Below, piece after piece: positions 1 through 44,199 of a stretch of 64,000 nt of DNA (the first letter of the stretch is position 1; every line of letters begins with the position of its first letter). The stretch covers positions 62,001-126,000 of the IMG/VR virus record IMGVR_UViG_3300033997_000243; one strand, written 5' to 3'. Below the pieces are notes generated by a model. That model had not been told where the DNA came from. It ran no database searches and was given only the letters and a program-made list of their open reading frames with translations. The translations under genes and the position numbers were made by a program.

Positions 1-2
1 AT

Positions 3-119
3 GGGCAAATTGTTTACCGTTGGTGTCACGATTCAACTGGTTTTGAATGCAGCCAAGTTGAAAATCCGGCTTACGTAAGTAACCAACACGATCCTAAAAA
101 CATTATGATGGTGCGCTAA
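3..119 (+). CDS. 3' end of an upstream CDS (partial, ...GQIVYRWCHDSTGFECSQVENPAYVSNQHDPKNIMMVR*)
   Basis: Frame 3 is open from the window start to TAA 117-119, which overlaps the ATG of the next gene (TAATG coupling). Confidence 0.5.
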   Translation, partial: GQIVYRWCHDSTGFECSQVENPAYVSNQHDPKNIMMVR

Positions 120-1048: not shown

Positions 1049-1447
1049 ATGAAAATCAAAGTATTCGTTTCGCAAAGTTCGTACTCTTTGGCCAGACTTA
1101 AAGCATCTGACTCTAAATTCAGACAGTTGGCTGACGACAGATTTACTTCGTCACAAATCAAAAAACTTATGACCAAAGGAACGAAACTTCTTATGGTTGT
1201 TACAGGTGCTTACACACGTAAGGCTGATAACAAAGTAACTCCACAACTAAACAAATATACTCTTGTCATCAAAGAAGTTGAAATAGCTGGCAACGGAAAA
1301 TTAAAAAGAGTGTTGATTGCTCCAGAAGGTAAACATTCAAAAGATGAAATTAAACCTTTATCTGCGGCTGCTTTGGCAAAACTGTTGAACGGCGAAAAGG
1401 CTACTCTTAAATCTAAGAAAGGCACCAAAAGTGCTTCTCTTAAATAA
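1049..1447 (+). CDS. Lys-rich hypothetical protein with shared N-terminal leader (putative internal head protein)
   Basis: SD AAGGA; starts MKIKVFVSQSS; highly basic. Confidence 0.75.
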   Translation: MKIKVFVSQSSYSLARLKASDSKFRQLADDRFTSSQIKKLMTKGTKLLMVVTGAYTRKADNKVTPQLNKYTLVIKEVEIAGNGKLKRVLIAPEGKHSKDEIKPLSAAALAKLLNGEKATLKSKKGTKSASLK

Positions 1448-1465
1448 ATTCAATAGGAAAATCTT

Positions 1466-2293
1466 ATGAAAATTCAAGTTATGTTGTCTGAGAGCGCAGA
1501 TTTAACTGCTGCCCAAGAAAAGAAAATTGTTGTTGGCGGTACTTTTACTTTATATACAATAGTATCAACTAAAAAGACTCCACCAAGACCGAGCATTGGC
1601 TTTATTCCGAAAGAAACTATAGAGCGCTACAAAAAGATGCCTCCTGTTATAACAAAGGCGGCCACTAACTATCGTATAACCGAAGTGAATAGCACTAAAT
1701 CTGGATCAGTTAAATCCATAGTTGCTGTTGCAGAGCGTGACAATTCTCTTACACGTAAGCATCCCGGCAATTTATCAACTTTAACATTAACTAAAGCTAA
1801 ACTTTTGAGTTTAATCGGAAACAAAATAACAAAAGAAGATGTTGGAAGTCAGAGTATAACACTTACTACAAATTCTAAAGATACAACAGCATTCTTTAAC
1901 AAAACTGAGGCAAAAGACAAACAACGCATAAAAGCCTTAGATGAACAAATAGCTAAACTTCAAAAACAACGTGAAGAATTAGCTGGAGTTCAGAAAAAGC
2001 GTAACGATGCTATACACGATGCGGAATCCGCTAAGAAACGTGCTGAACTTAAAGCACAAGGCTATAGTTATTTAGTTGTTATTGAAGGTAAAGAAACAAA
2101 GAAAAAAACTTTAAGTGAAGCCCGTTCAGTCAGACCAAAGATCGGTGAAACCGCTTCGATTTTTGCTGTATTAGCAGGTAAACGCTCAAAGATTCTTACG
2201 TGGTCAGCTAAAGATCCTGTAACCAAAAGAGTCCTTAAAGGATATAATTGGTTCTTTACTTCAGCTGCTGCACAGAAAAAGTTTGATGTATGA
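1466..2293 (+). CDS. Lys-rich hypothetical protein with shared leader; central coiled coil
   Basis: SD AGGA; starts MKIQVMLSESA. Confidence 0.75.
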   Translation: MKIQVMLSESADLTAAQEKKIVVGGTFTLYTIVSTKKTPPRPSIGFIPKETIERYKKMPPVITKAATNYRITEVNSTKSGSVKSIVAVAERDNSLTRKHPGNLSTLTLTKAKLLSLIGNKITKEDVGSQSITLTTNSKDTTAFFNKTEAKDKQRIKALDEQIAKLQKQREELAGVQKKRNDAIHDAESAKKRAELKAQGYSYLVVIEGKETKKKTLSEARSVRPKIGETASIFAVLAGKRSKILTWSAKDPVTKRVLKGYNWFFTSAAAQKKFDV

Positions 2294-2330
2294 ACTTAAT
2301 GCGTTCGATTCCTACTATTAAGGCGGCCCT

Positions 2331-2933
2331 ATGAAAATCAAAGTATTTATTAGCTCTTCAAATAACAAACCTAAAAAAATTGGAGGCTCCAATTGGTTTG
2401 ATGAACTTTCAGACGAAGCTAAAAAAGAATATATTGAAGAACATCCAAATAGTCAGTACGCTAAACATCATATGCGTATGGCAAAACATAAGGAACGTAA
2501 ATCAAGGACTGGCCAATTCGCATCCGGCTTAGATCCTAGATTTGCAGAAGCATCTAAAGGTTTAGATCCTAATCTATTAAAAGAAGTATCTAAACTGGAT
2601 GACGATTTGCAGCAAAGTTTCGCCAAAAGATTTTCTGGCGCTATGGAAGAGTTTGGTTTGGATGCTGATAGTGAAGAAACAACTGCTTCACTGGAAAGTC
2701 ACAAAAATAGAGCGTTGAAAGCAAAGAAAGATGCAGAAAACGCAACTAATCCTATCGCCAAAAAGAAAGCTTTAGCTACTTTTGAGCGTGAACGAGATAA
2801 CTACAAAGAGTTAAAGCTTGCTCACCAGAAAGCTTTGGATGTTTTAAAGACTCCTGGTAAGTTGGATAAATTTAAGAATCAGCTTGGTAGACAGCTTTTA
2901 AGTAAGCTAAGTAAAGTTCAAGCGGAAGAGTAA
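2331..2933 (+). CDS. Basic hypothetical protein with shared leader
   Basis: Starts MKIKVFISSSN; WFDELSDEAKKEYIEEHPNSQYAK resembles a motif recalled from jumbo-phage virion proteins. Confidence 0.75.
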   Translation: MKIKVFISSSNNKPKKIGGSNWFDELSDEAKKEYIEEHPNSQYAKHHMRMAKHKERKSRTGQFASGLDPRFAEASKGLDPNLLKEVSKLDDDLQQSFAKRFSGAMEEFGLDADSEETTASLESHKNRALKAKKDAENATNPIAKKKALATFERERDNYKELKLAHQKALDVLKTPGKLDKFKNQLGRQLLSKLSKVQAEE

Positions 2934-2935
2934 GA

Positions 2936-3094
2936 ATGAAAAAACTCATGGTGGCTAATCTTGCTAAGAAAATTCCTGAAGATCAGCGCAATAAACGTCA
3001 ACAAAAATTAGTTGATGAAATTCCTGAGATTCATGCACGCCTTAAACAAAAAACTGGCCCCTTTGCCTTTATGCGTAAATCGAAGTTTAATTAA
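2936..3094 (+). CDS. Small basic ORF, 52 aa (MKKLMVANLAKK...RKSKFN), absent from the ORF track
   Basis: Translated by hand; fills the gap between 2933 and the terminator at about 3093. Confidence 0.6.
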   Translation: MKKLMVANLAKKIPEDQRNKRQQKLVDEIPEIHARLKQKTGPFAFMRKSKFN

Positions 3095-3113
3095 GGGCTT
3101 CGGCCCTTTTCTT
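3093..3113 (+). terminator. Intrinsic terminator with C(UUCG)G tetraloop
   Basis: AAGGGC-TTCG-GCCCTT followed by TTCTTT. Confidence 0.8.
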
Positions 3114-3124
3114 TAGGTGAGCTT

Positions 3125-3457
3125 ATGAAAATTCTTGTGAGTCTTTGTACAAGTGTAGACAGTATTCAAAAAGAAAATGGTAAACTTGTATACAAGGGAA
3201 TGACTTTCATTGATTTTGATAAACCCATTGAAATAAAGGATAAGCGCTACAAACGTGCGGTATTAGCACGTAAAGGAAATAATTTTAAACTAATAAAGTA
3301 TGGCCATGTTGACTATGAAGATTTCACTACTCACAAAGATCCTGAACGTAGAGAAAATTTTCGCAAAAGATTTCGTGGCATCTTAAAGTCTAATGGTAAG
3401 CCAGCTTATAAAGATAAATGGCAAGCTGCGTATTGGGCATACAACGATCTTTGGTAG
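3125..3457 (+). CDS. Basic protein with leader; DUF5754-like family (recalled from large DNA viruses)
   Basis: MKILVSLCTS leader; YGHVDYEDFTTHKDPERRENFRKRF...AAYWAYNDLW. Confidence 0.65.
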   Translation: MKILVSLCTSVDSIQKENGKLVYKGMTFIDFDKPIEIKDKRYKRAVLARKGNNFKLIKYGHVDYEDFTTHKDPERRENFRKRFRGILKSNGKPAYKDKWQAAYWAYNDLW

Positions 3458-3465
3458 GGAATTCT

Positions 3466-4143
3466 ATGAAGGTTAATATATTAATTTCTGAATCTGCTTC
3501 GACAACTCGTGCATTTAAAGCAAAACTTGCTGAATTAGGTTCCTTATTGTTTGAGTCAGATAATAAATTGATCAGGGAACTAAAGGTAACTAAACCTTTT
3601 GTTAAGACCATTGATGGATTAGCTTATGCTATCCGACTTGCACGTAAATCACACGTTGCTCAAAATAAAGTTGAAGAGTTAGCTACTTTGCTCGGAGTCA
3701 ATCCAGCACATATAACTTCTGCTGTGGATAAAACTGGCTATTGTCTCCACTTTAGCTCTGGTGCTGCTACCAAAGCAATTGCTACATTAAAAAGAATGGC
3801 TAAAGCCAAATCAGTTGGAGCACCTGCTAAAAAATCTAAGACCGCAGACTTCGGTTGGAATGTAGCAATCCAACAAATGACTCGTCAGAAAGAGAATATT
3901 GTTCAAGATAAAGGTCTTGAAGTTGCAGCTAAATGTAAACTGGCTTTTGCTGACCGCATTGATAAGCTTGTTGCTAAAAATACTAAAACACATGATGTCA
4001 GAAGTTTTAGTATGGAAGTTGTTGACTATCCACAAATGACAAGCACTGTCGGCACAGACGAAGTTTATATAACTGTCAAACTAAAGCTGGATCAAAAATC
4101 TCGACCTTCTCAGGGTCGTCCAGTGAAAAAAGAATTCAAGTAA
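3466..4143 (+). CDS. Basic hypothetical protein with shared leader
   Basis: Start moved from 3418 to ATG 3466 (SD AGGGA); begins MKVNILISESA. Confidence 0.75.
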   Translation: MKVNILISESASTTRAFKAKLAELGSLLFESDNKLIRELKVTKPFVKTIDGLAYAIRLARKSHVAQNKVEELATLLGVNPAHITSAVDKTGYCLHFSSGAATKAIATLKRMAKAKSVGAPAKKSKTADFGWNVAIQQMTRQKENIVQDKGLEVAAKCKLAFADRIDKLVAKNTKTHDVRSFSMEVVDYPQMTSTVGTDEVYITVKLKLDQKSRPSQGRPVKKEFK

Positions 4144-4173
4144 TTGGTCGCTCTAAAAAGAATTCAAGTAATT
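4127..4173 (+). repeat. 19-bp direct repeat AAAAAGAATTCAAGTAATT x2
   Basis: Copies at 4127-4145 and 4155-4173; the first spans the stop codon of the upstream gene. Confidence 0.85.
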
Positions 4174-4200
4174 AAATATTTTAGTTAAAGGAAATCAAAA

Positions 4201-5421
4201 ATGAAAATTCGTGTATTCACATCAACCTCAGCGCGTAAGCGTGATATTGTAGTAAATCAAGTTGGCACCAGTTTTGAAGTGTCTGTTGACGATAAAGTTC
4301 TGGTTAAGTTTACTGGCAAAGCAACACCTGATACTATTACAGAAAAATTGCAAAAGAAAGAATTCAATGGCGCAGAAATCAAACGTGTGTTTGCTCAGAT
4401 TGCTAAGCTTGGTAAAGCTGATTCCCGTGAAGTTAAGGTTAAACCTTCAGCTGCTGATTCAAAAACAAAGAAACAGCTTTTCTCTGATGCAACTGTACGT
4501 TTGGTGGCAAAAGAATTTCCAGAAGCTATAGCTACTTTAGCTCAACTGAATAAAACAGATCGTGCTAAAGCCTATGCCAGATCGCATCATGGCCTTGGTA
4601 TGGGTGTTCGGAATTTTATGCGTTCTAAGACCACAGAAAAAGCAGTGAGAAATCCTGTCACTGCCGACGATATTTGGTCAGAAGTTTTAGATCGTGCAAT
4701 CGAATTGAAACTTTATAAAGATACGGATGCTGATGTTTACCAGTTAGCAAAAATAACTGGTAATGCTGTAAAAGAGTTGGATATGGTTTTGTACAAAGAC
4801 GCAGATTCAGTGAAGAAATTAGGAGCCTCTATTGCACGTAGCTTGAAAAAAGCTTTCGGTGATGGCATGACTATTAAAGCTCGTGTACGTGAGCACTTTA
4901 GTCCGTCACCTAATGTACCTGCACACAGATACAATCACTTTGCTGTTTCCTTACCTATCAATATGATTACTGTAGGCGGCAACAATAAACTAAATATTTA
5001 TGTCGGTACTGGCATTGTAATGATCGAAGAGGATGGGCCGAAATCTACTAAGGTTACTAACCATAAACTGGTGAAAGGAACTAACGCAGAAGTTTTGGAG
5101 GCTATTACCAAGAATCTTAAGATCAAAACCAATACTGTTGAAAAACCTGCGTCAACAGGAAAATTCAATGAAGCAAGTCAATATGTTGTTGATAAATTCG
5201 GCAAAGATCTTAAGGCAAAAGGTATTGACTTAATACCTACACCTGGTGGCATTAGTTTTTATCATCCACGTCGCGGAACCGTTAAAGCACGTTTCGGAAT
5301 CAAAAATGGTAAGATGATGCACATGACTAAGTATAAGGCCAGTTTTGGTGAAACTTTTGACATGAGTAAACCAATTAGTAAAGCTGTTATCAGCAAAATT
5401 GTCGCTCCCTTACTTAAATAA
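4201..5421 (+). CDS. Basic hypothetical protein with shared leader
   Basis: SD AAGGA; starts MKIRVFTSTSA. Confidence 0.8.
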   Translation: MKIRVFTSTSARKRDIVVNQVGTSFEVSVDDKVLVKFTGKATPDTITEKLQKKEFNGAEIKRVFAQIAKLGKADSREVKVKPSAADSKTKKQLFSDATVRLVAKEFPEAIATLAQLNKTDRAKAYARSHHGLGMGVRNFMRSKTTEKAVRNPVTADDIWSEVLDRAIELKLYKDTDADVYQLAKITGNAVKELDMVLYKDADSVKKLGASIARSLKKAFGDGMTIKARVREHFSPSPNVPAHRYNHFAVSLPINMITVGGNNKLNIYVGTGIVMIEEDGPKSTKVTNHKLVKGTNAEVLEAITKNLKIKTNTVEKPASTGKFNEASQYVVDKFGKDLKAKGIDLIPTPGGISFYHPRRGTVKARFGIKNGKMMHMTKYKASFGETFDMSKPISKAVISKIVAPLLK

Positions 5422-5434
5422 TTTTTCCATAGGA

Positions 5435-5603
5435 TAAGGAGGTGATCCATATCTCGTGGTAACTACACCACGTTAAAGAAGGTAGTAGAGCAACCGCTCC
5501 GCTGCATAGAGTCAGTGATTTGATCAACTTTAACTGGAGATCATTATGAAGGCACTTCTTATCTAAACTTTATTTCAAGAGCATTCTTTTGGGTGCTCTT
5601 TCT
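5435..5603 (+). ncRNA. Candidate structured small RNA or leader element (16S 3'-end complement, pseudoknot, mini-ORF, terminal hairpin)
   Basis: TAAGGAGGTGATCCA 5435-5449; stem CGTGGT/ACCACG whose loop ACTAC is complementary to GTAGT 5482-5486; hairpin AAGAGCATTC-TTTT-GGGTGCTCTT 5577-5600. Confidence 0.45.
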
Positions 5604-5629
5604 AATAAGGTTTCCACTAAGGAACAAAT

Positions 5630-6286
5630 ATGAAAATTCGTGTATTCATTTCAGAATCAAGTCAAGAAGATGAAGAGTTTCAAAGAATTTGCGCGTTGTA
5701 CCTTGAGCGTCAATCCGTAGTACGTGCTTTAGGTGAAATCGACCGTGTGGTAAACGCCACAACTCAGGACGCAAACGAAATAGAAAGTGATAAAAGCTTT
5801 AATACTCGTAAACGAAATCTTCAGGAAGAGGTTGCAAAGTTTGATCTTGAAATCTCAAATCTCAAACGCAGAATTTTATACGGTACTTCTCCGTGGAAAA
5901 GTAAAGATAGCGAGTGGGTTAAAGAATTTATAGCAAAATGTTCTACCTCACTTATTGCCAATCCTTCACTAATACAAGCGAATAATGAAACCCAGTATAT
6001 AGAAGTAGCTTCAAAACTTCGCAGAGAGTTACTTGATAGTGTTAGAATGATCGCAAACTTTAAAAGCGAAAATATAGCTAATCTGTTATACGCTTGCGCT
6101 AAGTTTTATTTGGATATGTCAAACAGCGGTCAAAGTTCTTTATCTCAAGTTACGTATTCGGCTGCTGTAACCGAATTGCATAAAGTTCTTGAGTTATATG
6201 AACCTATTCTTATTCGTATATACAAACACGGCATTCGTAAAGATTACATGAAAGTGTTTGCTCAGGTTTTCAAGAATTTTGGTTAA
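5630..6286 (+). CDS. Helical hypothetical protein with shared leader
   Basis: SD AAGGA; starts MKIRVFISESS. Confidence 0.8.
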   Translation: MKIRVFISESSQEDEEFQRICALYLERQSVVRALGEIDRVVNATTQDANEIESDKSFNTRKRNLQEEVAKFDLEISNLKRRILYGTSPWKSKDSEWVKEFIAKCSTSLIANPSLIQANNETQYIEVASKLRRELLDSVRMIANFKSENIANLLYACAKFYLDMSNSGQSSLSQVTYSAAVTELHKVLELYEPILIRIYKHGIRKDYMKVFAQVFKNFG

Positions 6287-7193: not shown

Positions 7194-7230
7194 TAGGTAA
7201 GACAAATTAACCGTGTACAAAGGAACTCGT

Positions 7231-8931
7231 ATGAAAAAGCCGATTAAAGCCAAGGTTACGCCTGTGCATGATAAAAATGCAGCCAAGCCAAAAGCTAAGA
7301 AACCAGTTGTAATTCCGAATAGCATTAAGTATGCTGCGGAAAAATCGAAATCTCGTGTTGTGTTTGCTGTTCCAGGCCGTTACATTTTAAAAAATCGTCG
7401 TGCAACCTTCGCTATTGTGCGGATTGCAGATGACGTTAAAATGAGTCCAAGCGTAGCCACTAAAGTTTTCAAGGTTACTGCAAGTGATATGGATCTTACA
7501 CAAGAACAAATCTTTGCACTTGAGCCAATTGAAATGGATTCTTTGAGTGCTGCACCTGGTGCGAAAGTTTCTGGTCTTGACTCAAAGATGGGCAAGAAAA
7601 CACATGCACCAAATACCTTATCAAAAGGTTGGTGGGTTTTCCGTAAAGGTAATGACGGTAAAGTTGCAAAAGCTTTTGCTGGTGGCCGCATCAGTGGTCG
7701 TCGTATCTTATCTTTAATCGATCCTTCTCAAGCACCTAAGCCAAAAACTGAAGTGATTGACGAAACCAAAAAAGCTCCGGCCAAGAAAACTGGTGCTGAA
7801 TTAAAAGCAGCTGGTCAAATCAAAGCTTTGCAGACTGAGTTCAAAAAACTTGGTGGCGAACTTACTGCTGGCAAAGAACGCTTAACCACTTTACAACGTG
7901 CAACATCTAAAATTGCTTTGAAAGAAAAGCTGAAGAAAATAATTGCCCGTCGTAAAGAAATTTCTGCTGAGATTAAAGCTTTGAAATCTGGTGAACCTGC
8001 ACCAAAAATTAATCCTTCAGCTAAGGCTCCTGCCGTTAAGAAACCTGCTGCTACAGGAAAGATCACTAAGTCTGATATTAGTGCGTTACCTAAACGCCAA
8101 CAAACAGCTTATATGAATCTGAAGGAAAAAGGCACGGCTATTGTTCAGGCTATTAAAGCACTGAGAGAAAAGTTGACTAAGTTGAAAACAAAACCAGCTA
8201 AAGCCAAAGTAGAAGCTGAGATTGCTAAGCAAACAAAACTTCGTGATAAGGTTGTAAAAGCTTTAGCTGACTTCCATGAAAAAATTCGTAATGGAAGTGC
8301 AGGTCAGGTAGTTCCTGCTCATAAACAAAAACCTTCAAAATCACCTGAAGCTGGTAAAGCAGTTCCTCCTGCTAAAAAACCAAAGGCTGAGCCAGCATCT
8401 AAAGCTCCGGCAGCTAAGCCAAAAGCTACGGTTCCAAATGCTGAAGTAAAACAGGCCAAACAAGAAGTTAAAAAGTTGGATCAAGAAATTGATCGTGACG
8501 TTCAAACAATAGATCGTTTGAAAGACATGCTTGAAAAAACAAAAGACGTTAATCGTCGTAAAAAACTTCAGGCCAGCATTGATGGTCTTAACAAGCGTAT
8601 TGATTTAAAAGCTCGTAAGCAAAGTGGTGCGAATAGCGTACTGCAATCAAAAAGCAGTGAGCAAATTTACTTCCCTACTTACTCAGCTGCCGTTCAACAT
8701 GCCGTCGATGGTTTAGCTTCAAAAGGATTAGCCTACGAAGCTGCCGATTTTGAACGCATCGTCACACATGGAACAGCAAAACCTGCTGCTGGTAAAACAA
8801 CTCGCTTTGTGTTGCCAATTAAATCTAAAGGCGGCTTGATCAGTAAGAGCGCTAAAGGTTTAACTGTTGCTGTTTATCATGCAGATGATCGCACTCAAAA
8901 TCCATTTGAATTAACTCACTACGTTTCTTGA
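7231..8931 (+). CDS. Large Lys/Ala/Pro-rich (histone H1-like composition) putative DNA-condensing head protein; paralog of 8964
   Basis: SD AAGGA before ATG 7231; PAKK/PAAK repeats, coiled coils; N-terminal ~150 aa align with 8964. Confidence 0.7.
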   Translation: MKKPIKAKVTPVHDKNAAKPKAKKPVVIPNSIKYAAEKSKSRVVFAVPGRYILKNRRATFAIVRIADDVKMSPSVATKVFKVTASDMDLTQEQIFALEPIEMDSLSAAPGAKVSGLDSKMGKKTHAPNTLSKGWWVFRKGNDGKVAKAFAGGRISGRRILSLIDPSQAPKPKTEVIDETKKAPAKKTGAELKAAGQIKALQTEFKKLGGELTAGKERLTTLQRATSKIALKEKLKKIIARRKEISAEIKALKSGEPAPKINPSAKAPAVKKPAATGKITKSDISALPKRQQTAYMNLKEKGTAIVQAIKALREKLTKLKTKPAKAKVEAEIAKQTKLRDKVVKALADFHEKIRNGSAGQVVPAHKQKPSKSPEAGKAVPPAKKPKAEPASKAPAAKPKATVPNAEVKQAKQEVKKLDQEIDRDVQTIDRLKDMLEKTKDVNRRKKLQASIDGLNKRIDLKARKQSGANSVLQSKSSEQIYFPTYSAAVQHAVDGLASKGLAYEAADFERIVTHGTAKPAAGKTTRFVLPIKSKGGLISKSAKGLTVAVYHADDRTQNPFELTHYVS

Positions 8932-8934
8932 TAA

Positions 8935-8952
8935 AATGGGCTTCGGCCCATT
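8935..8952 (+). terminator. UUCG-tetraloop hairpin (probable terminator)
   Basis: AATGGGC-TTCG-GCCCATT; weak U tract. Confidence 0.55.
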
Positions 8953-8963
8953 AAGGAAAAACA

Positions 8964-10007
8964 ATGATTATCTCGTTGAGCGTTTCGGCAAAGAAGCCAG
9001 CCGTGCCGAACAGTGTTCAGTATGTTTTGGAACAAGCTAAAGGCCGTTTAGTTTTTGCGGAATCAGGACGTTATGTTTTCAAAACAAGACAAGGCGATTT
9101 TGCTTTAGCCCGTTTCAAAGACGAAACTAAATTTTCACCATCTATGAATGTGAAAATGTTTAGCAATAAAATGGTTTCTAAATCGGAAGATTTCAATGTA
9201 AGTACAGAAGCTTACTCTGAACCTGAAGATGAATTGCAAGCAGAAGCGGCAGCTAAAGCACCTGGTGCAAAAAATAATGCAGCCTCTACAAAGATGGGCG
9301 TTAAAAAACGTGCTCCTGGAATGATGGCTCCAGGTTGGTGGCTTTTCCATAAAGACGGCGGTAAGGTTACTCGTCAGTATGTTGGCCCACGTTTAAGCGG
9401 AAGAAAATTACTTTCTCTTGTTAAGTCTGAGAGCCAATCTAATAATGGTAAGCCTGATACAAAAGAAACCAAACATGATATTGGAGACAATACTCCGGTT
9501 AAAGTATCTAAAGTAAGTGAACTTTATGTTCCAACAAAAGATCCTGTTAATGACGCAATCAAAGTATGGAAAGCCTTGGACAAAAAACTTGAGTCCGAAG
9601 GTATTCCAACAAAAGAAACTTTAGCTGCTGTTGATGCTGCTATAGCTAAAATGCAAAAGATGTACGATGTTTTAACTTCACCTGAAAACAAAAGCAAACA
9701 TTTAGGTGACAGTATTGAACTTAACTACTACCTGAAAGACCTGAAATCTATAAGATCTGAAATGGCTAAAAAACCAAAATTAGATGAAGCAAATAAAAAA
9801 ACGCTTGCTTTATTTATGAAGGCTAAAGATGATGGTCACGGAAACATTCAAGTAAATTTTGGTGAAGAAGCAAAAGCAAAAGCAGCTAAAACTTTAATGT
9901 CAAGCTTAGGTATTTTAGCTTACACTACAGGAATGAATAGAAGATACGTCAATATTGGCAAACCTGGACATAAAAAGCTTAGAGCAATTATGAAGCAATT
10001 GTCTTAA
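8964..10007 (+). CDS. Basic hypothetical protein with leader; paralog of 7231
   Basis: Starts MIISLSVSA; shares PNS..Y.....K.R.VFA..GRY and APGAK..KMG..GWW.F.K..GKV blocks with 7231. Confidence 0.8.
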   Translation: MIISLSVSAKKPAVPNSVQYVLEQAKGRLVFAESGRYVFKTRQGDFALARFKDETKFSPSMNVKMFSNKMVSKSEDFNVSTEAYSEPEDELQAEAAAKAPGAKNNAASTKMGVKKRAPGMMAPGWWLFHKDGGKVTRQYVGPRLSGRKLLSLVKSESQSNNGKPDTKETKHDIGDNTPVKVSKVSELYVPTKDPVNDAIKVWKALDKKLESEGIPTKETLAAVDAAIAKMQKMYDVLTSPENKSKHLGDSIELNYYLKDLKSIRSEMAKKPKLDEANKKTLALFMKAKDDGHGNIQVNFGEEAKAKAAKTLMSSLGILAYTTGMNRRYVNIGKPGHKKLRAIMKQLS

Positions 10008-10085: not shown

Positions 10086-10135
10086 ATGGTATACGGAATG
10101 ACACTCTGTATATGAACTTTAACAGGAGCCACACG

Positions 10136-12469
10136 ATGATCAAGACAAAAATGAAAGCCTCAAAACAGGCTATCATAGTTCATGGCGCAAGTGAGGCAGA
10201 GGCTATCGCTAAATATACAGCTGTTGCTTCTGGAGAAAGCCTTCAAGCTTTCACAGACGGTACAAATGAGTTTTATACTCATGCGTCAGCAACATCTTTA
10301 TATAATCCAGACACAGGAGATTTTGATCTTGATGCTTTGGACAATGGTGAATTTTCTGCTGAAGCCAGCGCTCGTACTGGAGCCGTAGATGTTTTCTACG
10401 GCGTATGTTCTGATGGTTGCGGTGAGCATGTTGTTGCTGACTGCCCTGTCACTTTCTGTCCTTCATGTTCAAGCGCTATGCCTGAAGAAGATGAAGGAGT
10501 CGATTTATCAGATGATGAAGATCTGGTATCGATGGAAGATGAAGAACCGGAAGAAGAAACTGAAGAAGAAATGGATGATGTTGAATACGAAGATTTAGAA
10601 GCTGAAGCTTCTGAAGGCATGATTGTAGTTTCAGGTGATAACTTAGATGAAGCACTTGAAAACTTCCGTGCCGTAGCTTCAAATCAAAGTCAACGTGTTA
10701 TTACTTCAGGCCATTCGGTTTTTGTAACTCATGCCAGTGATTCATTTGATTATGATCCATTAACCGGATCGCCAGACATCGAAGAAGCTGAAGCCTCTGA
10801 AATTACTATGCAGAGTGAAAGTTCTGACGGTAGCGACAACGTAGAAGCTGAACATTATATTTGTTCAGATGTTGACGGTTGTGGCGCACACGTAATCAGT
10901 ACCTCAAGTTCTGTATTGAACTGTCCTCGTTGTGCCAGCGGTTTGTTAGATCCGGCTGATTTCCATTCACACTCAGAAGATGATTCTGAAGATGAAGAAC
11001 TGGAAGCACTGTCGGCTGAAATCGAAGAACTGGAAAACGAATTAGGTATCTCAAGCGAAAGCGCTGACGAAGAGTTAGATGCTGAAATCGCTGCGTTACT
11101 TGCTGAATCAGGTGACGAAGAAGAAACCGAAGAAGAGGAAGAAATGGAGGAAGTTAATTATGACGACCTCGAAGCAGATCTTGCCTCTGATTTAGAATTC
11201 GAAGAAGAACTGGAATCTGAAAGTTCTGACAGCGATCTGGATGAAGATTTAGATCCAGATGCTGAAGAAGATTTATCAAGCGATGACATTCTTGAATCAG
11301 AATCTTATGATGAAAACGACGAGTTTGAATCTGTAAGTGCTGACGAAGATGAAGAGTATGATTTAGATGCTCTTGATCAAGAAATGTCTGCTTTAGATTC
11401 AGACGATATGGAATCAGAAAGTTCTGATGACATTGAATTGGATTCCGACATTGCCGCACTTCTGGCCGAATCAGAAGATGAAGAAATGGAAGATGACGAA
11501 ACTGAAGAAGAGTCCATTGAAATGGATGAATCTGAAGAAGAATCTGAAGAAGAAATCGAAGATACTGAATTAGATGACGAAGGTGACTACGGTGACATCG
11601 AAGGTCTGGATTTAGAATCAGAAAGTTCTGAATCTCCTGTAATGGAATTCGACGTCGATTTGTTATCTGCAATTTCTGCAACGGAAGATTTATCTGTTGA
11701 TAAATTCCATGTTGCTCACTGCGGTAAAATTGAAGGTCAATCAACTTGGACAGCATTCTATGGAAAACTTCCTGTAGCTATGGCGTCTGAGTCAAGTGTC
11801 GCTGATAAAGCTGCACTGAAAGATATTTTTGAAAGCGCTAAATTCGGTTCCGCTATCATGGCTCATGCGAAAGCTGAAGGCATTGAAAGTGCATTAGCTG
11901 AATTTAACTTTGAACGTATCAGTCCAGACCTTGATGTTGATGCTGTTGTGTCTAACGAAATCATTAAACGCAGCGAAAGCCGTGTTCGTGAAGTCGAGAC
12001 ACAAATGCAATCATACTCTGCAAATGTTCAAGCTGAAATAAATGCAGATATGGAACATCGTATGGATCGTTTAATGTCAGCATTAGCTACTTCGGCTTTA
12101 GGCATTAACCGTCATGTTTTTGCAAATGTAAGAAACCCAGTTGCTGATGCTCTGATTAGTGCATTATCTTCTGCTGGAGTTCGTAACGCTGACTCATTGG
12201 TTTCAGATGCTTTTGCTCAACACGGTGATCGTTACAGCGAAATCCTTTTAGGTCAAGCTCGTGAACTTCTGGAAAAATCAGAAGATACTCAAGACGAAAT
12301 TACACAACTTGTAGTTTCTGCTTCTGTGAATCGCGGTGGCTTAACAAGTGAAAGTAATACAGTGGAAGATCGTTTGTCTAACTTAACCACGGTTAAGCCT
12401 CAAACTCTTCAATCTGAATCTGCTCACAAACCACAAACAAATCGTTACCTGAGTCTTTTAGATTCGTAA
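10136..12469 (+). CDS. Prohead scaffold/core protein, extremely acidic, with two Cys4 zinc-ribbon modules
   Basis: Directly upstream of the decoration and capsid genes; long D/E tracts; CSDGCG...CPSC and CSDVDGCG...CPRC; SD CAGGAG before ATG 10136. Confidence 0.75.
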   Translation: MIKTKMKASKQAIIVHGASEAEAIAKYTAVASGESLQAFTDGTNEFYTHASATSLYNPDTGDFDLDALDNGEFSAEASARTGAVDVFYGVCSDGCGEHVVADCPVTFCPSCSSAMPEEDEGVDLSDDEDLVSMEDEEPEEETEEEMDDVEYEDLEAEASEGMIVVSGDNLDEALENFRAVASNQSQRVITSGHSVFVTHASDSFDYDPLTGSPDIEEAEASEITMQSESSDGSDNVEAEHYICSDVDGCGAHVISTSSSVLNCPRCASGLLDPADFHSHSEDDSEDEELEALSAEIEELENELGISSESADEELDAEIAALLAESGDEEETEEEEEMEEVNYDDLEADLASDLEFEEELESESSDSDLDEDLDPDAEEDLSSDDILESESYDENDEFESVSADEDEEYDLDALDQEMSALDSDDMESESSDDIELDSDIAALLAESEDEEMEDDETEEESIEMDESEEESEEEIEDTELDDEGDYGDIEGLDLESESSESPVMEFDVDLLSAISATEDLSVDKFHVAHCGKIEGQSTWTAFYGKLPVAMASESSVADKAALKDIFESAKFGSAIMAHAKAEGIESALAEFNFERISPDLDVDAVVSNEIIKRSESRVREVETQMQSYSANVQAEINADMEHRMDRLMSALATSALGINRHVFANVRNPVADALISALSSAGVRNADSLVSDAFAQHGDRYSEILLGQARELLEKSEDTQDEITQLVVSASVNRGGLTSESNTVEDRLSNLTTVKPQTLQSESAHKPQTNRYLSLLDS

Positions 12470-12503: not shown

Positions 12504-13205
12504 ATGCTTAACTATGCAAATACTCGTTTCTTCAAGACCGTTGACCGCGTTCTGGCCGACGGCGTTGGTATCAAAGAAGAAGGTTTCACTTTAGCTTTAG
12601 TTCAGGAAGAAGGTGAGTTACGTGCTCGTCTTTCAACTGGCGTTTCTGGTGAAATTTTTGGTGGCTTCGCTTGTTCAACAAACCTGCCAACAACTTTCTC
12701 AACTAAAGTTGTTGAAATTGCTGAACTGGATGATTTGACTGTTCAGTTAGATCGTACTCCACAATCTGCACAGATTCTGGTTAAAGTTGCTGGCGTTAAA
12801 TTAACTGTTGAAACTGGCACAGCTGCACCAACTGCTGATACTTCAGTTGTTCTGACTCCAGCCAACACTTTACTGTTCCACGGTAATGCTGCTGGCGAAT
12901 CAGTATTAATTCAGTATCATTATGAACTGTTAGCTTCTGAAGCAGTTGCTGAAACTGGCGATTACTTCGGTGGTGTAGGTAACAGTCCGGCTTCTGTTAT
13001 GGGTGTAGTTGGTGCTGTAATCGAAGGCACAATCTCTACAAACTTGTTCTTTGCTTCTGACGACTGGACTGGTGTTATCCATCCGAAGATGGGCGCTGGC
13101 GGTATGTTACGTGCTTCAGGTAATGGTACAGAATTAACGAATGTTAAAGTTGTACAAGTGCCGAACGCTGGTTCACCTTTCCTGACAGTTGAAGTTGGTA
13201 ACTAA
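12504..13205 (+). CDS. Head decoration/cement-like structural protein
   Basis: Lies between scaffold and capsid gene; highly-expressed codon usage; beta-rich; SD GGAG. Confidence 0.6.
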   Translation: MLNYANTRFFKTVDRVLADGVGIKEEGFTLALVQEEGELRARLSTGVSGEIFGGFACSTNLPTTFSTKVVEIAELDDLTVQLDRTPQSAQILVKVAGVKLTVETGTAAPTADTSVVLTPANTLLFHGNAAGESVLIQYHYELLASEAVAETGDYFGGVGNSPASVMGVVGAVIEGTISTNLFFASDDWTGVIHPKMGAGGMLRASGNGTELTNVKVVQVPNAGSPFLTVEVGN

Positions 13206-13252
13206 TAGTTACTGATTAAAACTTGAATCAAATTTTTGTGGAGAAATACAGT

Positions 13253-14347
13253 ATGAAAACCAATTTACAAGTCGGCGCTTCTTATCAACTGAAGAACGGC
13301 GCACCTTTGCACGATCTTCGTTTTGCCGGACAAGGTATGGCTGCACTTTCATCTAACGGTGAAATTAACGCATCAAGCAATGCAGATCTGTTAAAACAAA
13401 TTGGCCAACTTTTACAATCAGTATCAAGCGGTACTGTTGTTCAAGCTGCAACGCCTGATTCTTTCCTGTCATTATCTGCCGAGCAGAAACGTGATATTTT
13501 AGTTGCCGCAAAAGCATGTCCTAATAAGTGGGCTGCTTTAGGTGCTCACATTGCTGCTGACGTTCGTGAACAAGCAAGTCGTCAAGGTTTTTCACGCAAT
13601 CTGTGTGTGATCAATAACCTGAAGCAAGGTGAAACTCAAAAAGTTCCAATGCCTCGCCATCAAGCTAAAGCCGTTTTAGCTACTGGCCCAACTTCAATTT
13701 CTTACCAAATGATGCGTGATAAATATTTCACGCCACCAGAGTTTGAATTGAAAGCTGCTGTTCGCGTGAACAAACTGGATTTGGGTCAAGCGACTCACGA
13801 TCTGTTAGACCACGCTTACAACGATGCTGTTGAAGGTATGATCACTGCTGCTGACCGCGTGTGGAAACGTGCTGCTGATGCAACTGTAGGTAAAGCAAAT
13901 ACTTTAGCTGCTTTCGCTGGTGCATTTACTCCTGCCGTTATCGCTCGTGCTTCAACACAAATTCGTGATTGGAACTTACCAGTAAGTCGCGCTGTTATCG
14001 CAAACAGTTTTTGGGAAGATATTCAATCTGAAGGTGCCTGGGCCAATACACTGACTCCAGTATCTCAGTACGAATTAGTTATGACTGGCCGTGTTGCAAC
14101 TATCTTCGGTCTGGAATTAACTACTGACGGTTTCCGTCCTGAAAACCAACGTGTTCTGTCTCGCGGTGAAGCGTACATTGTTGCTGATAATGAATATCAC
14201 GCAACTTTAGGTTCTCGCGGTGGCATTGAATCTACTCCGACCGATGGTGCAAACCAAGGCGATACAACTAAGGGCTGGTTACTGTCAGAGGTTATGTCTC
14301 TGATAATTCCAAATACTCGCTCTGTAGTTAAAATGCAAAAGCTGTAA
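13253..14347 (+). CDS. Major capsid protein (HK97 fold)
   Basis: Start moved to ATG 13253 (SD GGAG); SRQGFSRNL..L.QG...P, ATGPT...FTPPEF, AADRVWK and TG.V.TIFG.EL.TDGFR motifs recalled from PaBG/Y3-type jumbo MCPs; position. Confidence 0.85.
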   Translation: MKTNLQVGASYQLKNGAPLHDLRFAGQGMAALSSNGEINASSNADLLKQIGQLLQSVSSGTVVQAATPDSFLSLSAEQKRDILVAAKACPNKWAALGAHIAADVREQASRQGFSRNLCVINNLKQGETQKVPMPRHQAKAVLATGPTSISYQMMRDKYFTPPEFELKAAVRVNKLDLGQATHDLLDHAYNDAVEGMITAADRVWKRAADATVGKANTLAAFAGAFTPAVIARASTQIRDWNLPVSRAVIANSFWEDIQSEGAWANTLTPVSQYELVMTGRVATIFGLELTTDGFRPENQRVLSRGEAYIVADNEYHATLGSRGGIESTPTDGANQGDTTKGWLLSEVMSLIIPNTRSVVKMQKL

Positions 14348-14515: not shown

Positions 14516-14518
14516 AGG

Positions 14519-14552
14519 AACCCGTATCGAGGCAACTTGGTACGGGTTTTCT
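14519..14552 (+). terminator. Strong intrinsic terminator (GNRA loop)
   Basis: AACCCGTATCGAG-GCAA-CTTGGTACGGGTT followed by TTCT. Confidence 0.85.
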
Positions 14553-15691: not shown

Positions 15692-17317
15692 ATGTCTTTA
15701 GCGCCTAACAATCCGAGTGCGGGCGTCTATACTTCCGAGAACGTGATACCAGAACAAATCGCTTCAACAAGCGTTAGTACCGGTGTCATTGTAACGGCTG
15801 CTGATCGCGGTCGTGTAGGACAAAGAATCTTTGTCGGAAATAAAGGCGACCTGCGTACAAAGTTCGGAAAAAATAATCCAAAGCTTACAAAAGCTTTGAA
15901 TTGTGCTGAACACTTTTTAGAAGAAAGTAACGCACTTTACGTTACTCGTGTTGCCCGTGATTCAAAGTATGCTGGCATTTTAATTCGCACAGTATCAAAC
16001 TTTGCTACCACAATTAAACTTTCTGCTGGTATTTCAGATCCAACCAGTGTTGGATTGGGTGAAGCTGACATCATGTTGGTTTATGCTGATAACCAAGGAA
16101 AGTGGGGCGATGATCTTTACGTAGTAATGTACCCTGATGTAGATGATGTTGATGGACATCAGTTCATTTTTGAAATTTACGAAGGAACTACTTCTACTGT
16201 TCCGGCTGAGAGATTCTCATGTACTACATTCTATAAAAAGAATGACAGTGGTTCTCAGTTGTTTGTCGAGGATGTTATTAATAACAGAAGTAAATTGGTT
16301 AAAGTAAAATTCAACCATGAGCATTTTGTTTTTGCATCCAATGATTCTCCACTGTTAGTAAACGCAATAATTGGCGGCCCATTTGATCCAGTTTCTGGAC
16401 AAAACAACGGACAATTATTTGGTGGCGATAACGGTTTGCCAATTACTAACGGTGATTTAATTAACGGCTGGAATTTATATGAAGATCATGAAAAAGTTGC
16501 TGTAGATATTCTGATGTCTGCTGGCTACACAGATCTTCCTATTCTGCATACAATCAACGACATTGCTGCTCGTCGTTTAGATTGTATTGCTGTTTTAGAT
16601 GCGCCTGAGATATTAACTGACGCTTCTGACTTAGTTAACTTCAGACGTAACACTTTAAATCTGAATAGCAGTAGTGCCGCACTTTATACTCCTTACCTGA
16701 AAATGTTGGACACAGATAATTCACGTTCTTATTTCGTTCCACCTTCAGGTAAAGTTGGTGCTGTTTACGCAAAAACAGATAGTATTGCACGTAGTTGGTT
16801 TGCTCCTGCTGGTTTGAATCGCGCTATTCTTTCTGGCGTTGAAGAACTTGGTAGTGTGTTCAAGCAAGCTGATCGTAACATGCTTACTCAAAACCAAATC
16901 AACTTTATTATTGAGAAGCAAGGTTACGGAAATGTAATTTGGTTAGCTGATACACTTTATGCGAGTGGCGGCCCATTACAAGACATTGGTGTTCGTCGTT
17001 TACTTGCGATCTTACACCGTATTGTTCGTCGCGCTCAACTTCAATCTGTTTTCCAACCTAACGATGATTTCTTACGTCGTAAAATTCGTGACGATATGAT
17101 TGCATTACTTGCACCTATTCGTCGTGATCGTGGTTTGGATTGGTACGAAGTTGTTTGCAGTCGTGTTAATAACCCGAACGATCAAATTGCAAACGGCGAT
17201 TTAGTTTGTGATGTGTATTTAGATCCTACACGTTACACTAAACGTATCCACTTGAATGCAATCGTGCCGAAGAAAGGCGCTATTTCGTTCTCTGAAACTT
17301 TCTTGGATGCTGCCTAA
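15692..17317 (+). CDS. Contractile tail sheath protein
   Basis: N-terminal PSAGVYTSE; PPSG.V.AVYAKTD...WFAPAG.NR; NQINFI; IGVRRLL; C-terminal GDLVCDVYLDP. Confidence 0.95.
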   Translation: MSLAPNNPSAGVYTSENVIPEQIASTSVSTGVIVTAADRGRVGQRIFVGNKGDLRTKFGKNNPKLTKALNCAEHFLEESNALYVTRVARDSKYAGILIRTVSNFATTIKLSAGISDPTSVGLGEADIMLVYADNQGKWGDDLYVVMYPDVDDVDGHQFIFEIYEGTTSTVPAERFSCTTFYKKNDSGSQLFVEDVINNRSKLVKVKFNHEHFVFASNDSPLLVNAIIGGPFDPVSGQNNGQLFGGDNGLPITNGDLINGWNLYEDHEKVAVDILMSAGYTDLPILHTINDIAARRLDCIAVLDAPEILTDASDLVNFRRNTLNLNSSSAALYTPYLKMLDTDNSRSYFVPPSGKVGAVYAKTDSIARSWFAPAGLNRAILSGVEELGSVFKQADRNMLTQNQINFIIEKQGYGNVIWLADTLYASGGPLQDIGVRRLLAILHRIVRRAQLQSVFQPNDDFLRRKIRDDMIALLAPIRRDRGLDWYEVVCSRVNNPNDQIANGDLVCDVYLDPTRYTKRIHLNAIVPKKGAISFSETFLDAA

Positions 17318-44146: not shown

Positions 44147-44149
44147 TTG

Positions 44150-44174
44150 AAGGGGCTTCGGCCCCTTTTCTTTT
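44150..44174 (+). terminator. Intrinsic terminator ending the + strand arm (UUCG loop)
   Basis: AAGGGGC-TTCG-GCCCCTT TTCTTTT. Confidence 0.9.
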
Positions 44175-44199
44175 ACCTAAAGTTTATCAGTTTTTGGCA

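What the first reader, a model, noticed from the sequence alone, without database searches (positions are those of the whole stretch)
10136..11000. Scaffold built from a duplicated [globular + zinc ribbon + acidic linker] unit
Seen: unit 1 AIIVHGASEAEAIAKYTAVAS...FYTHASATSLYNPDTG + CSDGCGEH...CPSC, and unit 2 MIVVSGDNLDEALENFRAVAS...FVTHASDSFDYDPLTG + CSDVDGCGAH...CPRC. The acidic region also repeats (EIAALLAESGDEE / DIAALLAESEDEE). Well-studied scaffolds (T4 gp22, P22 gp8, HK97 delta domain) are helical without metal sites. Inference: the repeated beta/zinc units could be the receptors that bind the beta-strand leader by strand addition.
Basis: partly seen in the sequence, partly recalled or inferred. 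Interest (0 to 1): 0.6.

Follow-up and report, generated by a model that had tools for sequence, protein, structure and literature searches.

The report
Zinc-ribbon modules on jumbo-phage scaffold protein
A gene just upstream of the capsid gene of a 320-kb phage encodes a very acidic, probable head-scaffolding protein whose front end carries two copies of a previously undescribed small domain ending in a four-cysteine zinc ribbon; the domain is conserved across a whole lineage of jumbo phages, where databases label the protein "ATPase" without support.

Summary
ORF 10136-12469 (+) has two tandem ~110-residue units (35% identical, E 8e-18). Each is a beta-alpha-beta-beta subdomain, a flexible loop and a Cys4 zinc ribbon. 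Next come a 240-residue stretch that is 49% Asp+Glu with no Lys/Arg, then a conserved helical C-terminal domain. All eight cysteines are conserved in homologues. A profile of the unit finds only this family (122 clusters among 1.84 billion representatives, mostly two units per protein). No solved structure resembles it.

The phage is a PaBG/Lu11-type jumbo myophage. Gene order is head-maturation protease, a cluster of genes starting MKIKVF(V/I)SES, this gene, a virion protein, the major capsid protein, then tail sheath. The leader's second half matches a motif, hydrophobic-x-S-E-S-S, that occurs repeatedly in the acidic region (11-fold over shuffles across the family). A variant sits at a conserved capsid-protein position that roughly fits the ~20% mass loss reported for PaBG.

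Best reading: a protease-processed scaffolding or core protein with novel zinc modules. The "ATPase" label has no support.

The parts
10136..12469 (+). Gene for the probable prohead scaffolding/core protein. It is 777 aa from ATG 10136; the ORF listing reads it from ATG 10112 as 785 aa (P0001).
   Evidence: ORF. AGGAG lies 8 nt before ATG 10136. The database copy is 777 aa. It matches phrog_20988 at E 2.8e-72 and is an orthologue of PaBG gp082 in the same gene order.
10157..10495 (+). Unit 1 (P0001 residues 16-128): a beta-alpha-beta-beta subdomain, a loop and a zinc ribbon.
   Evidence: BLASTP self-match; local HMM envelope 16-128; AlphaFold2 pLDDT above 90 outside the loop.
10352..10369 (+). 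Loop motif F-S-A-E-A-S in unit 1, lying within the low-confidence stretch of the unit.
   Evidence: The 10-residue pLDDT block that holds most of the motif averages 57. A hydrophobic-x-[SA]-x-[SA]-[SA] motif occurs upstream of the first Cys in 121 of 232 units, against 129 of 590 control windows.
10406..10468 (+). Zinc ribbon 1: C99-x3-C103 ... C116-P-x-C119.
   Evidence: The four cysteines are invariant in 15 and in 49 homologues. Weak matches to zinc-ribbon families and to RPB12/RpoP.
10496..10606 (+). Acidic linker 1 (residues 129-165), 62% Asp+Glu and predicted disordered.
   Evidence: Composition; pLDDT below 50.
10607..10960 (+). Unit 2 (P0001 residues 166-283), with the same architecture as unit 1.
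10808..10825 (+). Loop motif M-Q-S-E-S-S in unit 2, lying in a low-confidence loop.
   Evidence: The pLDDT block averages 64; motif listed.
10862..10933 (+). Zinc ribbon 2: C251-x5-C257 ... C271-P-x-C274.
   Evidence: C251, C271 and C274 are invariant and C257 is at least 90% conserved.
10961..11671 (+). Polyacidic, probably disordered region (residues 284-520): 49% Asp+Glu and no Lys/Arg. It carries L/M-E-S-E-S-S/Y motifs at 11210-11227, 11291-11308, 11408-11425 and 11612-11629, and the EIAALLAES repeat at 11084-11122 and 11447-11485.
   Evidence: The motif occurs 10 times in this protein against 0.076 per 100 aa genome-wide. Across 117 family members it occurs 103 times against 9.0 +/- 2.6 in composition-preserving shuffles.
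11672..12466 (+). Conserved C-terminal domain (residues 521-785). It has a small beta-sheet with helices, a 58-residue helix (about residues 609-666), helical hairpins, an L-Q-S-E-S-A motif (12407-12424) and then a short conserved tail.
   Evidence: AlphaFold2 mean pLDDT 84.5. Only generic long-helix or coiled-coil matches were found, best Z 6.6. Alignment of 51 homologues.
1..119 (+). Context: the 3' end of the head-maturation protease gene. The whole gene is genome 61292-62119 (L005:5292-6119).
   Evidence: phrog_18299 'head maturation protease', E 6.7e-88. tblastn with the neighbours of the scaffold homologues in L002 and L003 finds it. ORF listed.
1049..6286 (+). Context: a cluster of 6-7 genes whose products begin MK[IV]x[VI][FML][IVLT]S[ESQT]S, the 'leader'. 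Starts are at 1049, 1466, 2331, 3125 (looser match), 3466, 4201 and 5630.
   Evidence: The same leader sits on 7-8 genes directly upstream of the scaffold homologue in a 261-kb relative.
12504..13205 (+). Context: a virion structural protein, the homologue of PaBG gp81.
   Evidence: phrog_16710, E 1.2e-50. PaBG gp81 is present in virions.
13253..14347 (+). Context: the major capsid protein. A conserved [SA]-x-[SA]-S-G motif lies at residues 55-60 counted from M at 13253 (LLQSVSSG).
   Evidence: phrog_2522, E 1.9e-82. The S-G pair is invariant across four phages. The PaBG capsid protein loses about 20% of its mass on maturation.

Best explanation
The gene encodes the prohead scaffolding (core) protein of a PaBG/Lu11-lineage jumbo myophage. 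It has three parts.

1. Two tandem copies of a lineage-specific module of about 110 residues. Each is a beta-alpha-beta-beta subdomain, a flexible loop and a Cys4 zinc ribbon that most likely holds one Zn2+ as a structural clamp.
2. A 240-residue polyanionic disordered spacer carrying repeated L-E-S-E-S-S motifs.
3. A conserved helical C-terminal domain with a long helix. This domain probably oligomerises and contacts the capsid protein.

Proposed mechanism (inferred, not shown):
- The C-terminal domain co-assembles with the capsid protein.
- The zinc modules act as small folded docking knobs for other prohead components. Candidates are cargo proteins, portal or protease; the partner is unknown.
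- After assembly, the head-maturation protease encoded about 10 kb upstream cuts at hydrophobic-x-S/A-x-S/A-S motifs. These occur in the scaffold's spacer, possibly in the loop inside each unit, before its C-terminal tail, after the about 10-residue leaders of about a dozen neighbouring proteins, and after about residue 59 of the capsid protein.
- The scaffold is thereby chopped into small acidic pieces that leave or are displaced by DNA. This is the logic of T4 gp21/gp22/internal proteins.

Shown here: the duplication, cysteine conservation, confident fold models, restriction of the unit to this family, gene order, motif enrichment, and the presence of the protease gene.
Inferred: zinc binding, the scaffold role, cleavage at the motif, and any binding partner.
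For: - Duplication: E 8e-18. It is ancient, with first and second units split on one branch at 94/99 support.
- Cysteines are invariant.
- Each unit is modelled with pLDDT above 90, with low confidence in the linker and the loop.
- Sub-threshold but consistent zinc-ribbon matches: Zn_ribbon_19 in 8 of 26 units, plus RPB12/RpoP.
- The unit profile finds 122 cluster representatives among 1.84 billion, nearly all 550-860 aa with two or more units. In its own genome it hits only this ORF.
- Gene order protease, leader genes, this gene, virion protein, capsid protein, sheath. The scaffold-to-sheath part of this order is kept in PaBG, and the protease and leader genes also lie nearby in two metagenomic relatives.
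- Composition is 49% Asp+Glu with no Lys/Arg over 240 residues.
- The C-terminal model is helical with a 58-residue helix.
- Motif counts: 10 in this protein against 0.076 per 100 aa genome-wide, and 103 against 9.0 +/- 2.6 in shuffles across 117 homologues. A related motif sits at an invariant capsid-protein position.
- PaBG virions contain gp80, gp81 and gp83 but gp082 was not detected, and the capsid protein is about 20% lighter after maturation (PMC7412058).
Against: - No sequence or fold similarity to any known scaffolding protein was found: no Pfam family and only generic coiled-coil matches.
- At 777 aa the protein is unusually long for a scaffold.
- The PaBG proteome covered only 14 Coomassie-stained bands, so absence of gp082 is weak evidence.
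- The cleavage motif is inferred from sequence alone, and the scissile bond is unknown.
- Within the units the loop motif is only about 2.4-fold enriched over Ser/Ala-rich control windows. It could simply be structural.
- The strict S-E-S motif is absent from 76 of 117 homologues, which use Ala/Thr variants or none.
- Zinc binding is not measured.
Confidence: 0.6

Rival explanations
1. Each zinc-ribbon unit is the receptor for the N-terminal MKIKVF(V/I)SES leader of the neighbouring cargo proteins. The leader strand adds to the edge of the unit's beta-sheet, so the scaffold loads cargo into the prohead. This is compatible with the scaffold reading and is a more specific claim about the units' partner.
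For: - The leaders are real and strikingly conserved. MKIKVFVSES is near-identical between phages whose scaffolds are only about 37% identical. This conservation extends beyond what a cleavage site alone needs.
- Leader genes cluster next to the scaffold gene in the window and in a 261-kb relative.
- Each unit has a small 3-4-stranded sheet.
- Unit copy number varies from one to four, as expected for a multivalent adaptor.
- From my own knowledge, not tested here: T4 capsid-targeting sequences and the recruitment of minor proteins by the P22 scaffold are precedents.
Against: - There is no positive evidence of contact, and the single complex job returned no verdict.
- The leader's second half equals the motif repeated in the scaffold's own spacer. 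A shared protease site explains the resemblance without any docking.
- Proteases bind substrates as extended strands, so a strand-like leader is expected anyway (general knowledge).
Confidence: 0.2
2. The protein is not a scaffold. It is a packaged acidic internal head protein, an ejected protein or a DNA mimic, whose polyanionic region acts inside the capsid or in the host. The zinc modules would serve that other role.
For: - The region is extremely acidic, like known DNA-mimic proteins.
- It lies among genes for probable packaged proteins. One leader protein matches a 'minor head protein and DNA pilot' family, and a relative's neighbour carries a DarA_C domain.
Against: - It was not detected among PaBG virion bands although its neighbours were.
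- It lacks the N-terminal leader that the neighbouring cargo proteins carry.
- Its position next to the capsid protein is conserved, and its long-helix C-terminal domain fits a scaffold.
- The annotated PaBG region and the called genes flanking the homologues in two relatives show no other scaffold candidate.
Confidence: 0.12
3. It is an ATPase, as annotated in RefSeq and in PHROGs (phrog_20988).
For: Only the inherited annotation.
Against: - There is no Pfam ATPase domain.
- A Walker-A-like string occurs in only 8 of 120 homologues, with varying sequence, and not in this protein.
- The models show no P-loop fold match.
Confidence: 0.01

Closest known systems
PaBG gp082 / phrog_20988 ('ATPase') of the PaBG-Lu11-NCTB, Erwinia Y3/Alexandra and Dickeya JA/AD1 jumbo phages
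   Same: It is a true orthologue family: phrog E 2.8e-72, with tblastn matches at 27-32% identity over 59-70% of the query. It has the same three-part architecture with two units, as seen in the translated PaBG protein, and the same position upstream of the gp81-like and capsid genes.
   Different: The window's protein is longer (777 against 643 aa) because its acidic spacer is longer. The family's 'ATPase' name is not supported by any test here.
T4 prohead core system: gp22 scaffolding core protein, gp21 protease, and internal proteins with about 10-residue capsid-targeting sequences (from my own knowledge)
   Same: The logic is the same. An acidic core protein is encoded upstream of the capsid gene. 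One protease motif is shared by scaffold, capsid protein and cargo leaders. The leaders are about 10 residues, begin with MK and are presumably removed. The scaffold is presumably cut into small acidic peptides.
   Different: No detectable homology: Pfam S77 and Portal_T4 profiles find nothing in this genome, and the scaffold has no Pfam hit. The protein is about three times longer than gp22. The candidate motif has small residues (S/A-x-S/A-S) rather than T4's L/I-x-E. T4 gp22 has no zinc-binding or globular module.
P22 gp8 scaffolding protein (from my own knowledge)
   Same: A modular scaffold in which a C-terminal helical element binds the coat protein and upstream regions recruit minor proteins. 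This is the precedent for the units acting as recruiting modules.
   Different: gp8 is all-helical and metal-free, and it is recycled rather than cleaved. No similarity was detected here.
Herpesvirus assembly protein and assemblin (from my own knowledge)
   Same: A C-terminal tail of the scaffold binds the capsid protein and is cut off at a site with small residues (Ala-Ser). Here a conserved tail follows an L-Q-S-E-S-A type motif.
   Different: This is an analogy only. The protease here (phrog_18299) shows no sequence match to any solved structure, and its fold was not modelled.
Cys4 zinc ribbons such as RNA polymerase subunit RPB12/RpoP and Pfam Zn_ribbon_19 / Zn_ribbon_8
   Same: Two cysteine knuckles (C-x3-5-C-G and C-P-x-C) on beta-hairpins. 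Weak hits: RPB12 at E 0.46; 8cro_P at TM 0.52 normalised to the target with 29% identity; Zn_ribbon_19 in 8 of 26 units.
   Different: All matches are below family thresholds. The ribbon is fused to a beta-alpha-beta-beta subdomain, and the whole unit has no structural match (best Z 2.7; only family members in the viral library).

Membership tests
phrog_20988 / PaBG gp082 family | Significant full-length profile match and conserved gene position | tested here: met
   E 2.8e-72. 76 phage records match. The order scaffold homologue, gp81-like, capsid protein, sheath is kept in PaBG, L002 and L003.
Zinc ribbon (Cys4) | Four conserved cysteines in two knuckles separated by a beta-hairpin | tested here: met
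   Cysteines are invariant. Short strands are predicted around both knuckles with pLDDT above 90.
Zinc ribbon (Cys4) | Match to a curated zinc-ribbon family above its threshold | tested here: not met
   Only sub-threshold hits, best E 0.0026 for Zn_ribbon_19. The profile search of solved structures gave E 0.46.
Zinc ribbon (Cys4) | Bound zinc ion | not testable with these tools
   Needs metal analysis of purified protein.
Phage scaffolding / prohead core protein (functional class) | Encoded in the head module next to the capsid gene, with the maturation protease nearby | tested here: met
Phage scaffolding / prohead core protein (functional class) | Extended helical, oligomerising region | tested here: met
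   A 58-residue helix with helical hairpins, mean pLDDT 84.5. Oligomerisation itself was not tested.
Phage scaffolding / prohead core protein (functional class) | Present in proheads, absent or fragmented in mature virions | tested here: inconclusive
   The PaBG orthologue is not among the 14 stained virion bands. No prohead data exist.
Phage scaffolding / prohead core protein (functional class) | Homology to a described scaffold family | tested here: not met
   No Pfam hit for the whole protein or the C-terminal domain. No solved-structure relative by sequence.
P-loop ATPase (database annotation) | Conserved Walker A motif and an ATPase domain | tested here: not met
   No Pfam ATPase domain. 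Walker-A-like strings occur in 8 of 120 homologues, with varying sequence, and none in this protein.

The most novel reading that the evidence does not exclude
The tandem zinc-ribbon modules are the long-sought receptors on a scaffold for capsid-targeting leaders. Each module would capture the MKIKVFVSES strand of one of about a dozen cargo proteins. The same protease motif in the leader and in the loop inside each module would then release both. The result would be a multivalent, zinc-stabilised, protease-resettable cargo-loading device in jumbo-phage heads.
Probability: 0.15. Interest if true: 0.8.

Novelty: new variant of a known kind. Interest (0 to 1): 0.55.

Why it matters
- How giant phage heads are scaffolded and how internal cargo is targeted is poorly understood. 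Even for T4, the receptor for the capsid-targeting sequence is not defined (my own knowledge).
- This lineage offers a tractable system with cultured members on Pseudomonas, Erwinia and Dickeya. It has a probable scaffold with discrete, foldable, metal-stabilised modules, a highly conserved 10-residue leader on many neighbouring proteins, and one candidate protease motif that links scaffold, cargo and capsid protein.
- The work corrects a propagated "ATPase" annotation and defines a domain that is not in Pfam.
- If the leader and its partner were confirmed, they could be used to package foreign proteins into jumbo-phage capsids.

Tried and rejected
- Complex prediction. I ran one job with the two units (alignment A3) and the first 40 residues of the leader protein at 5630. 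Scores were 0.01-0.02 and the tool's verdict was "no answer". This is not evidence either way.
- Fold searches of the N-terminal model:
  - Foldseek against the PDB gave nothing with E below 2.
  - The exhaustive VIA search gave a best Z of 2.7, including rows for dodecin-like beta-alpha-beta-beta proteins at Z 2.3-2.5, which are insignificant.
  - The ESM Atlas gave only weak zinc-ribbon or Trm112-like rows, TM 0.2-0.3. A feature search was below 0.8.
- Fold searches of the C-terminal model found only generic long helices.
- Pfam on the whole protein, on 26 separate units and on 51 C-terminal domains gave nothing above threshold.
- A word-based search with the C-terminal domain alone, for short stand-alone relatives, found none.
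- Pfam Peptidase_S77, Peptidase_S78 and Portal_T4 profiles found nothing in the phage's own genome. The protease was found instead through the PaBG supplement, tblastn and PHROGs. It has no relative by sequence among solved structures.
- The PaBG region 1-46 kb holds no annotated protease.
- Literature searches found no description of this protein as a scaffold and no zinc-binding phage scaffold.
- The window's 347-aa protein is not homologous to PaBG gp83.
- The 200-aa antisense ORF at 11154-11756 was rejected as a by-product of the GAA-rich coding strand.
Full report
**Numbering.** Residue numbers are those of P0001, the 785-aa reading from ATG 10112. Subtract 8 for the likely true start at ATG 10136.

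**What is in the sequence**

The finding lies in one long ORF on the + strand, listed as 10112-12469. The likely start is ATG 10136. AGGAG sits 8 nt upstream, homologues begin MIK..., and the database copy of this protein is 777 aa.

The internal duplication is real. Residues 16-123 align with residues 166-278 at 35% identity over 113 columns, E 8e-18. Each copy ends in C-x3-5-C-G-x-H ... C-P-x-C. The acidic repeat EIAALLAES(G/E)DEE occurs at residues 325-337 and 446-458. At the DNA level the region is GAA-rich low complexity, not a recent tandem duplication.

**Whose gene it is**

The window is part of a 319,518-bp virus record with terminal repeats.

The neighbouring genes, in order:

| Window position | Product | Evidence |
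|---|---|---|
| ends at 119 | head-maturation protease | phrog_18299, E 6.7e-88; |
| 119-1039 | SprT-like protein with an HExxH motif | |
| 1049-6286 | six or seven small genes whose products start MK[IV]x[VI][FML][IVLT]S[ESQT]S | |
| 7213-10007 | two paralogous proteins | |
| 10136-12469 | this gene | |
| 12504-13205 | virion structural protein | phrog_16710; |
| 13253-14347 | major capsid protein | phrog_2522; |
| 15692-17317 | tail sheath | |
| 17343-17894 | tail tube | |

The protein matches phrog_20988, labelled "ATPase" (E 2.8e-72). It also matches 76 jumbo-phage records at 27-32% identity: PaBG, NCTB, Lu11, Erwinia, Dickeya, Xanthomonas and others. PaBG gp082 sits in the same order before gp81 and the capsid protein gp80, and it shows the same two units when translated.

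**Conservation of the units**

- In 15 homologues C99, C103, C116, C119, C251, C271 and C274 are invariant, and C257 is at least 90% conserved. In 49 homologues the first four are again invariant.
- A profile built from 26 units was run against 1.84 billion cluster representatives. It found 122 proteins at E <= 0.001, nearly all 550-860 aa with two matched stretches, some with three to five.
- By a cysteine regex, 78 of 117 full-length members have two ribbons, 16 have three, 1 has four and 22 have one. The last class is partly an undercount of variants.
- Within the phage's own genome the unit profile hits only this ORF.
- A maximum-likelihood tree puts all first units and all second units on either side of one branch (94/99 support). 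The duplication therefore predates the sampled lineages.

**Structure of the units**

AlphaFold2 on residues 9-292 with 49 homologues gave mean pLDDT 81.7, and each unit scored above 90. In model numbering (P0001 residue minus 8), unit 1 has a strand at 11-17, a helix at 20-31, strands at 36-40 and 45-49, and a short strand at 66-68. A low-confidence loop follows, then the ribbon hairpins. Unit 2 repeats this pattern. The 40-residue linker between them is disordered, and pTM is 0.47, so no fixed mutual arrangement is predicted.

No library shows the same fold:

| Search | Result |
|---|---|
| Foldseek, PDB | best E 2.8 |
| Exhaustive VIA, PDB representatives | best Z 2.7 |
| Viral structure library (BFVD) | only PaBG and one other family member |
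| ESM Atlas by shape | weak zinc-ribbon / Trm112-like rows |
| ESM Atlas by features | below 0.8 |

The ribbon part gives consistent but sub-threshold zinc-ribbon signals: RPB12 at E 0.46, 8cro_P at TM 0.52 normalised to the target, and Zn_ribbon_19 in 8 of 26 units. I read the unit as a lineage-specific beta-alpha-beta-beta subdomain fused to a Cys4 zinc ribbon. Zinc binding is inferred, not shown.

**The rest of the protein**

Residues 284-520 are 49% Asp+Glu with no Lys or Arg.

The C-terminal 274 residues, modelled with 51 homologues, gave mean pLDDT 84.5. The model has a small sheet with helices, a 58-residue helix and helical hairpins. Fold searches matched only generic long helices, best Z 6.6. 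No Pfam family matches. A word search found no short proteins carrying only this domain.

There is no ATPase domain. A Walker-A-like string occurs in only 8 of 120 homologues, with varying sequence, and not in this protein.

**A recurring linear motif**

The motif hydrophobic-[EQ]-[SA]-x-[SA] occurs 10 times in this protein, against 0.076 per 100 residues genome-wide. Four copies are L/M-E-S-E-S-S/Y in the acidic spacer. One is L-Q-S-E-S-A just before the C-terminal tail.

Across 117 family members, hydrophobic-[EQ]-S-[EDQ]-S occurs 103 times, against 9.0 +/- 2.6 in composition-preserving shuffles. However, 76 members lack the strict form; PaBG, for example, uses A-T-A-S and L-S-V-S-S variants.

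The leaders of the neighbouring genes end in the same motif (V-F-I-S-E-S-S). They are almost identical in a 261-kb relative whose scaffold is only about 37% identical: MKIKVFVSES[AS] on four genes, with looser forms on three or four more. Leader-like N-termini also occur just upstream of the protease gene and at a few other loci.

The capsid protein carries an invariant [SA]-x-[SA]-S-G at residues 55-60 in four phages. Removing about 59 of 364 residues is 16%. This is close to the "about 20%" mass loss reported for the PaBG capsid protein (PMC7412058).

Each unit also has such a motif (F-S-A-E-A-S, M-Q-S-E-S-S) in its low-confidence stretch. The enrichment there is modest, 121 of 232 units against 129 of 590 control windows, so I treat cleavage inside the units as a possibility only.

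**Interpretation**

Several lines point to a T4-like logic, in which a scaffolding or core protein is processed by the head protease:
- gene order;
- extreme acidity;
- the helical C-terminal domain;
- the nearby protease;
- the motif shared with the cargo leaders and the capsid protein;
- absence of gp082 from the 14 stained PaBG virion bands, while gp80, gp81 and gp83 are present.

The T4 comparison rests on my own knowledge of T4 gp21, gp22 and the internal proteins. No homology to that system was detected.

The zinc modules are the new element. Their partner is unknown.

It is attractive because the leader's first half is conserved beyond what a cleavage site needs, and because unit number varies from one to four. 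It has no positive support, and my single complex job gave no verdict. The resemblance between the leader and the scaffold spacer is explained more simply by a shared protease site. Proteases bind substrates as extended strands (general knowledge), so a strand-like leader is expected in any case.

**Novelty**

The family is already in sequence databases, uncharacterised and mislabelled. I found no paper that describes it as a scaffold, and none that describes a zinc-binding phage scaffold. I rate it a new variant of a known kind, a scaffold with metal-stabilised globular modules.

**Scores**

| Reading | Score |
|---|---|
| Composite best explanation (confidence) | 0.6 |
| Units dock the leaders (confidence) | 0.2 |
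| Packaged internal protein or DNA mimic, not a scaffold (confidence) | 0.12 |
| ATPase (confidence) | 0.01 |
| Interest | 0.55 |

**Limits**

- The large profile search was used once, because Pfam left the protein open and the claim of restriction to one family rests on absence elsewhere.

Noticed in passing
window 1049-6286 (+): starts at 1049, 1466, 2331, 3125, 3466, 4201, 5630. Also L005:3072 and L005:4766 upstream of the window, and window 18283, 41338, 132555 and 132973 (genome-relative coordinates): About a dozen proteins share an N-terminal leader, MK[IV]x[VI][FML][IVLT]S[ESQT]S[SA]. It is nearly identical (MKIKVFVSES) in a relative whose scaffold is only about 37% identical. It is probably a cleavable capsid-targeting propeptide.
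   Followed up: partly
window 1-119 (+), 3' end of genome 61292-62119 (L005:5292-6119): Head-maturation protease (phrog_18299, E 6.7e-88) with no Pfam S77 or S78 match and no sequence relative among solved structures. It carries its own conserved C-x2-C ... C-x-H motif (YTCSYCGH...CSHTR), which suggests a metal site in the protease as well.
   Followed up: partly
window 119-1039 (+): A 306-aa protein with an HELAH (HExxH) motif that matches phrog_37079. PaBG has a SprT-like gene in its corresponding upstream region. It may be a second, metal-dependent peptidase in the head module.
   Followed up: no
window 3125-3457 (+): A 110-aa leader-bearing protein matches the middle of phrog_220, 'minor head protein and DNA pilot' (E 3.7e-15). 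This fits the idea that the leader proteins are packaged or ejected cargo.
   Followed up: no
window 7213-8931 and 8964-10007 (+): Two adjacent paralogues share a 147-residue N-terminal domain (41% identity, E 2e-29) followed by Lys/Ala/Pro-rich regions. Neither has a Pfam or PHROG match. The second begins with a leader-like MIISLSVSAKK.
   Followed up: partly
L002:9365-9835, the gene directly upstream of the scaffold homologue in a 261-kb relative: A leader-bearing protein (MRVLVSIAKAKE) with a DarA_C domain, the phage P1 internal head and anti-restriction protein family. In L003 the corresponding neighbours include ferritin-like and Acb1-like genes.
   Followed up: no
window 11154-11756 (-): A 200-aa antisense ORF inside the acidic region. 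It is almost certainly an artefact of the GAA-rich coding strand.
   Followed up: no
window 13223-13252 (+): the ORF listing starts the capsid gene at TTG 13223. Alignment with three homologues favours ATG 13253 (MKTNLQ...).
   Followed up: partly
window 14517-14550 (+): A strong terminator-like hairpin (15 pairs followed by a T run) lies downstream of the capsid gene, before the next gene at 14574.
   Followed up: no
window 19908-20798 and 20802-21746 (+): Adjacent genes both match phrog_13792 (E about 1e-20). They are probably tandem paralogues in the tail/baseplate region.
   Followed up: no
window about 44,000-44,250: GC skew changes sign and the gene orientation switches from + to - at this point.
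   Followed up: no
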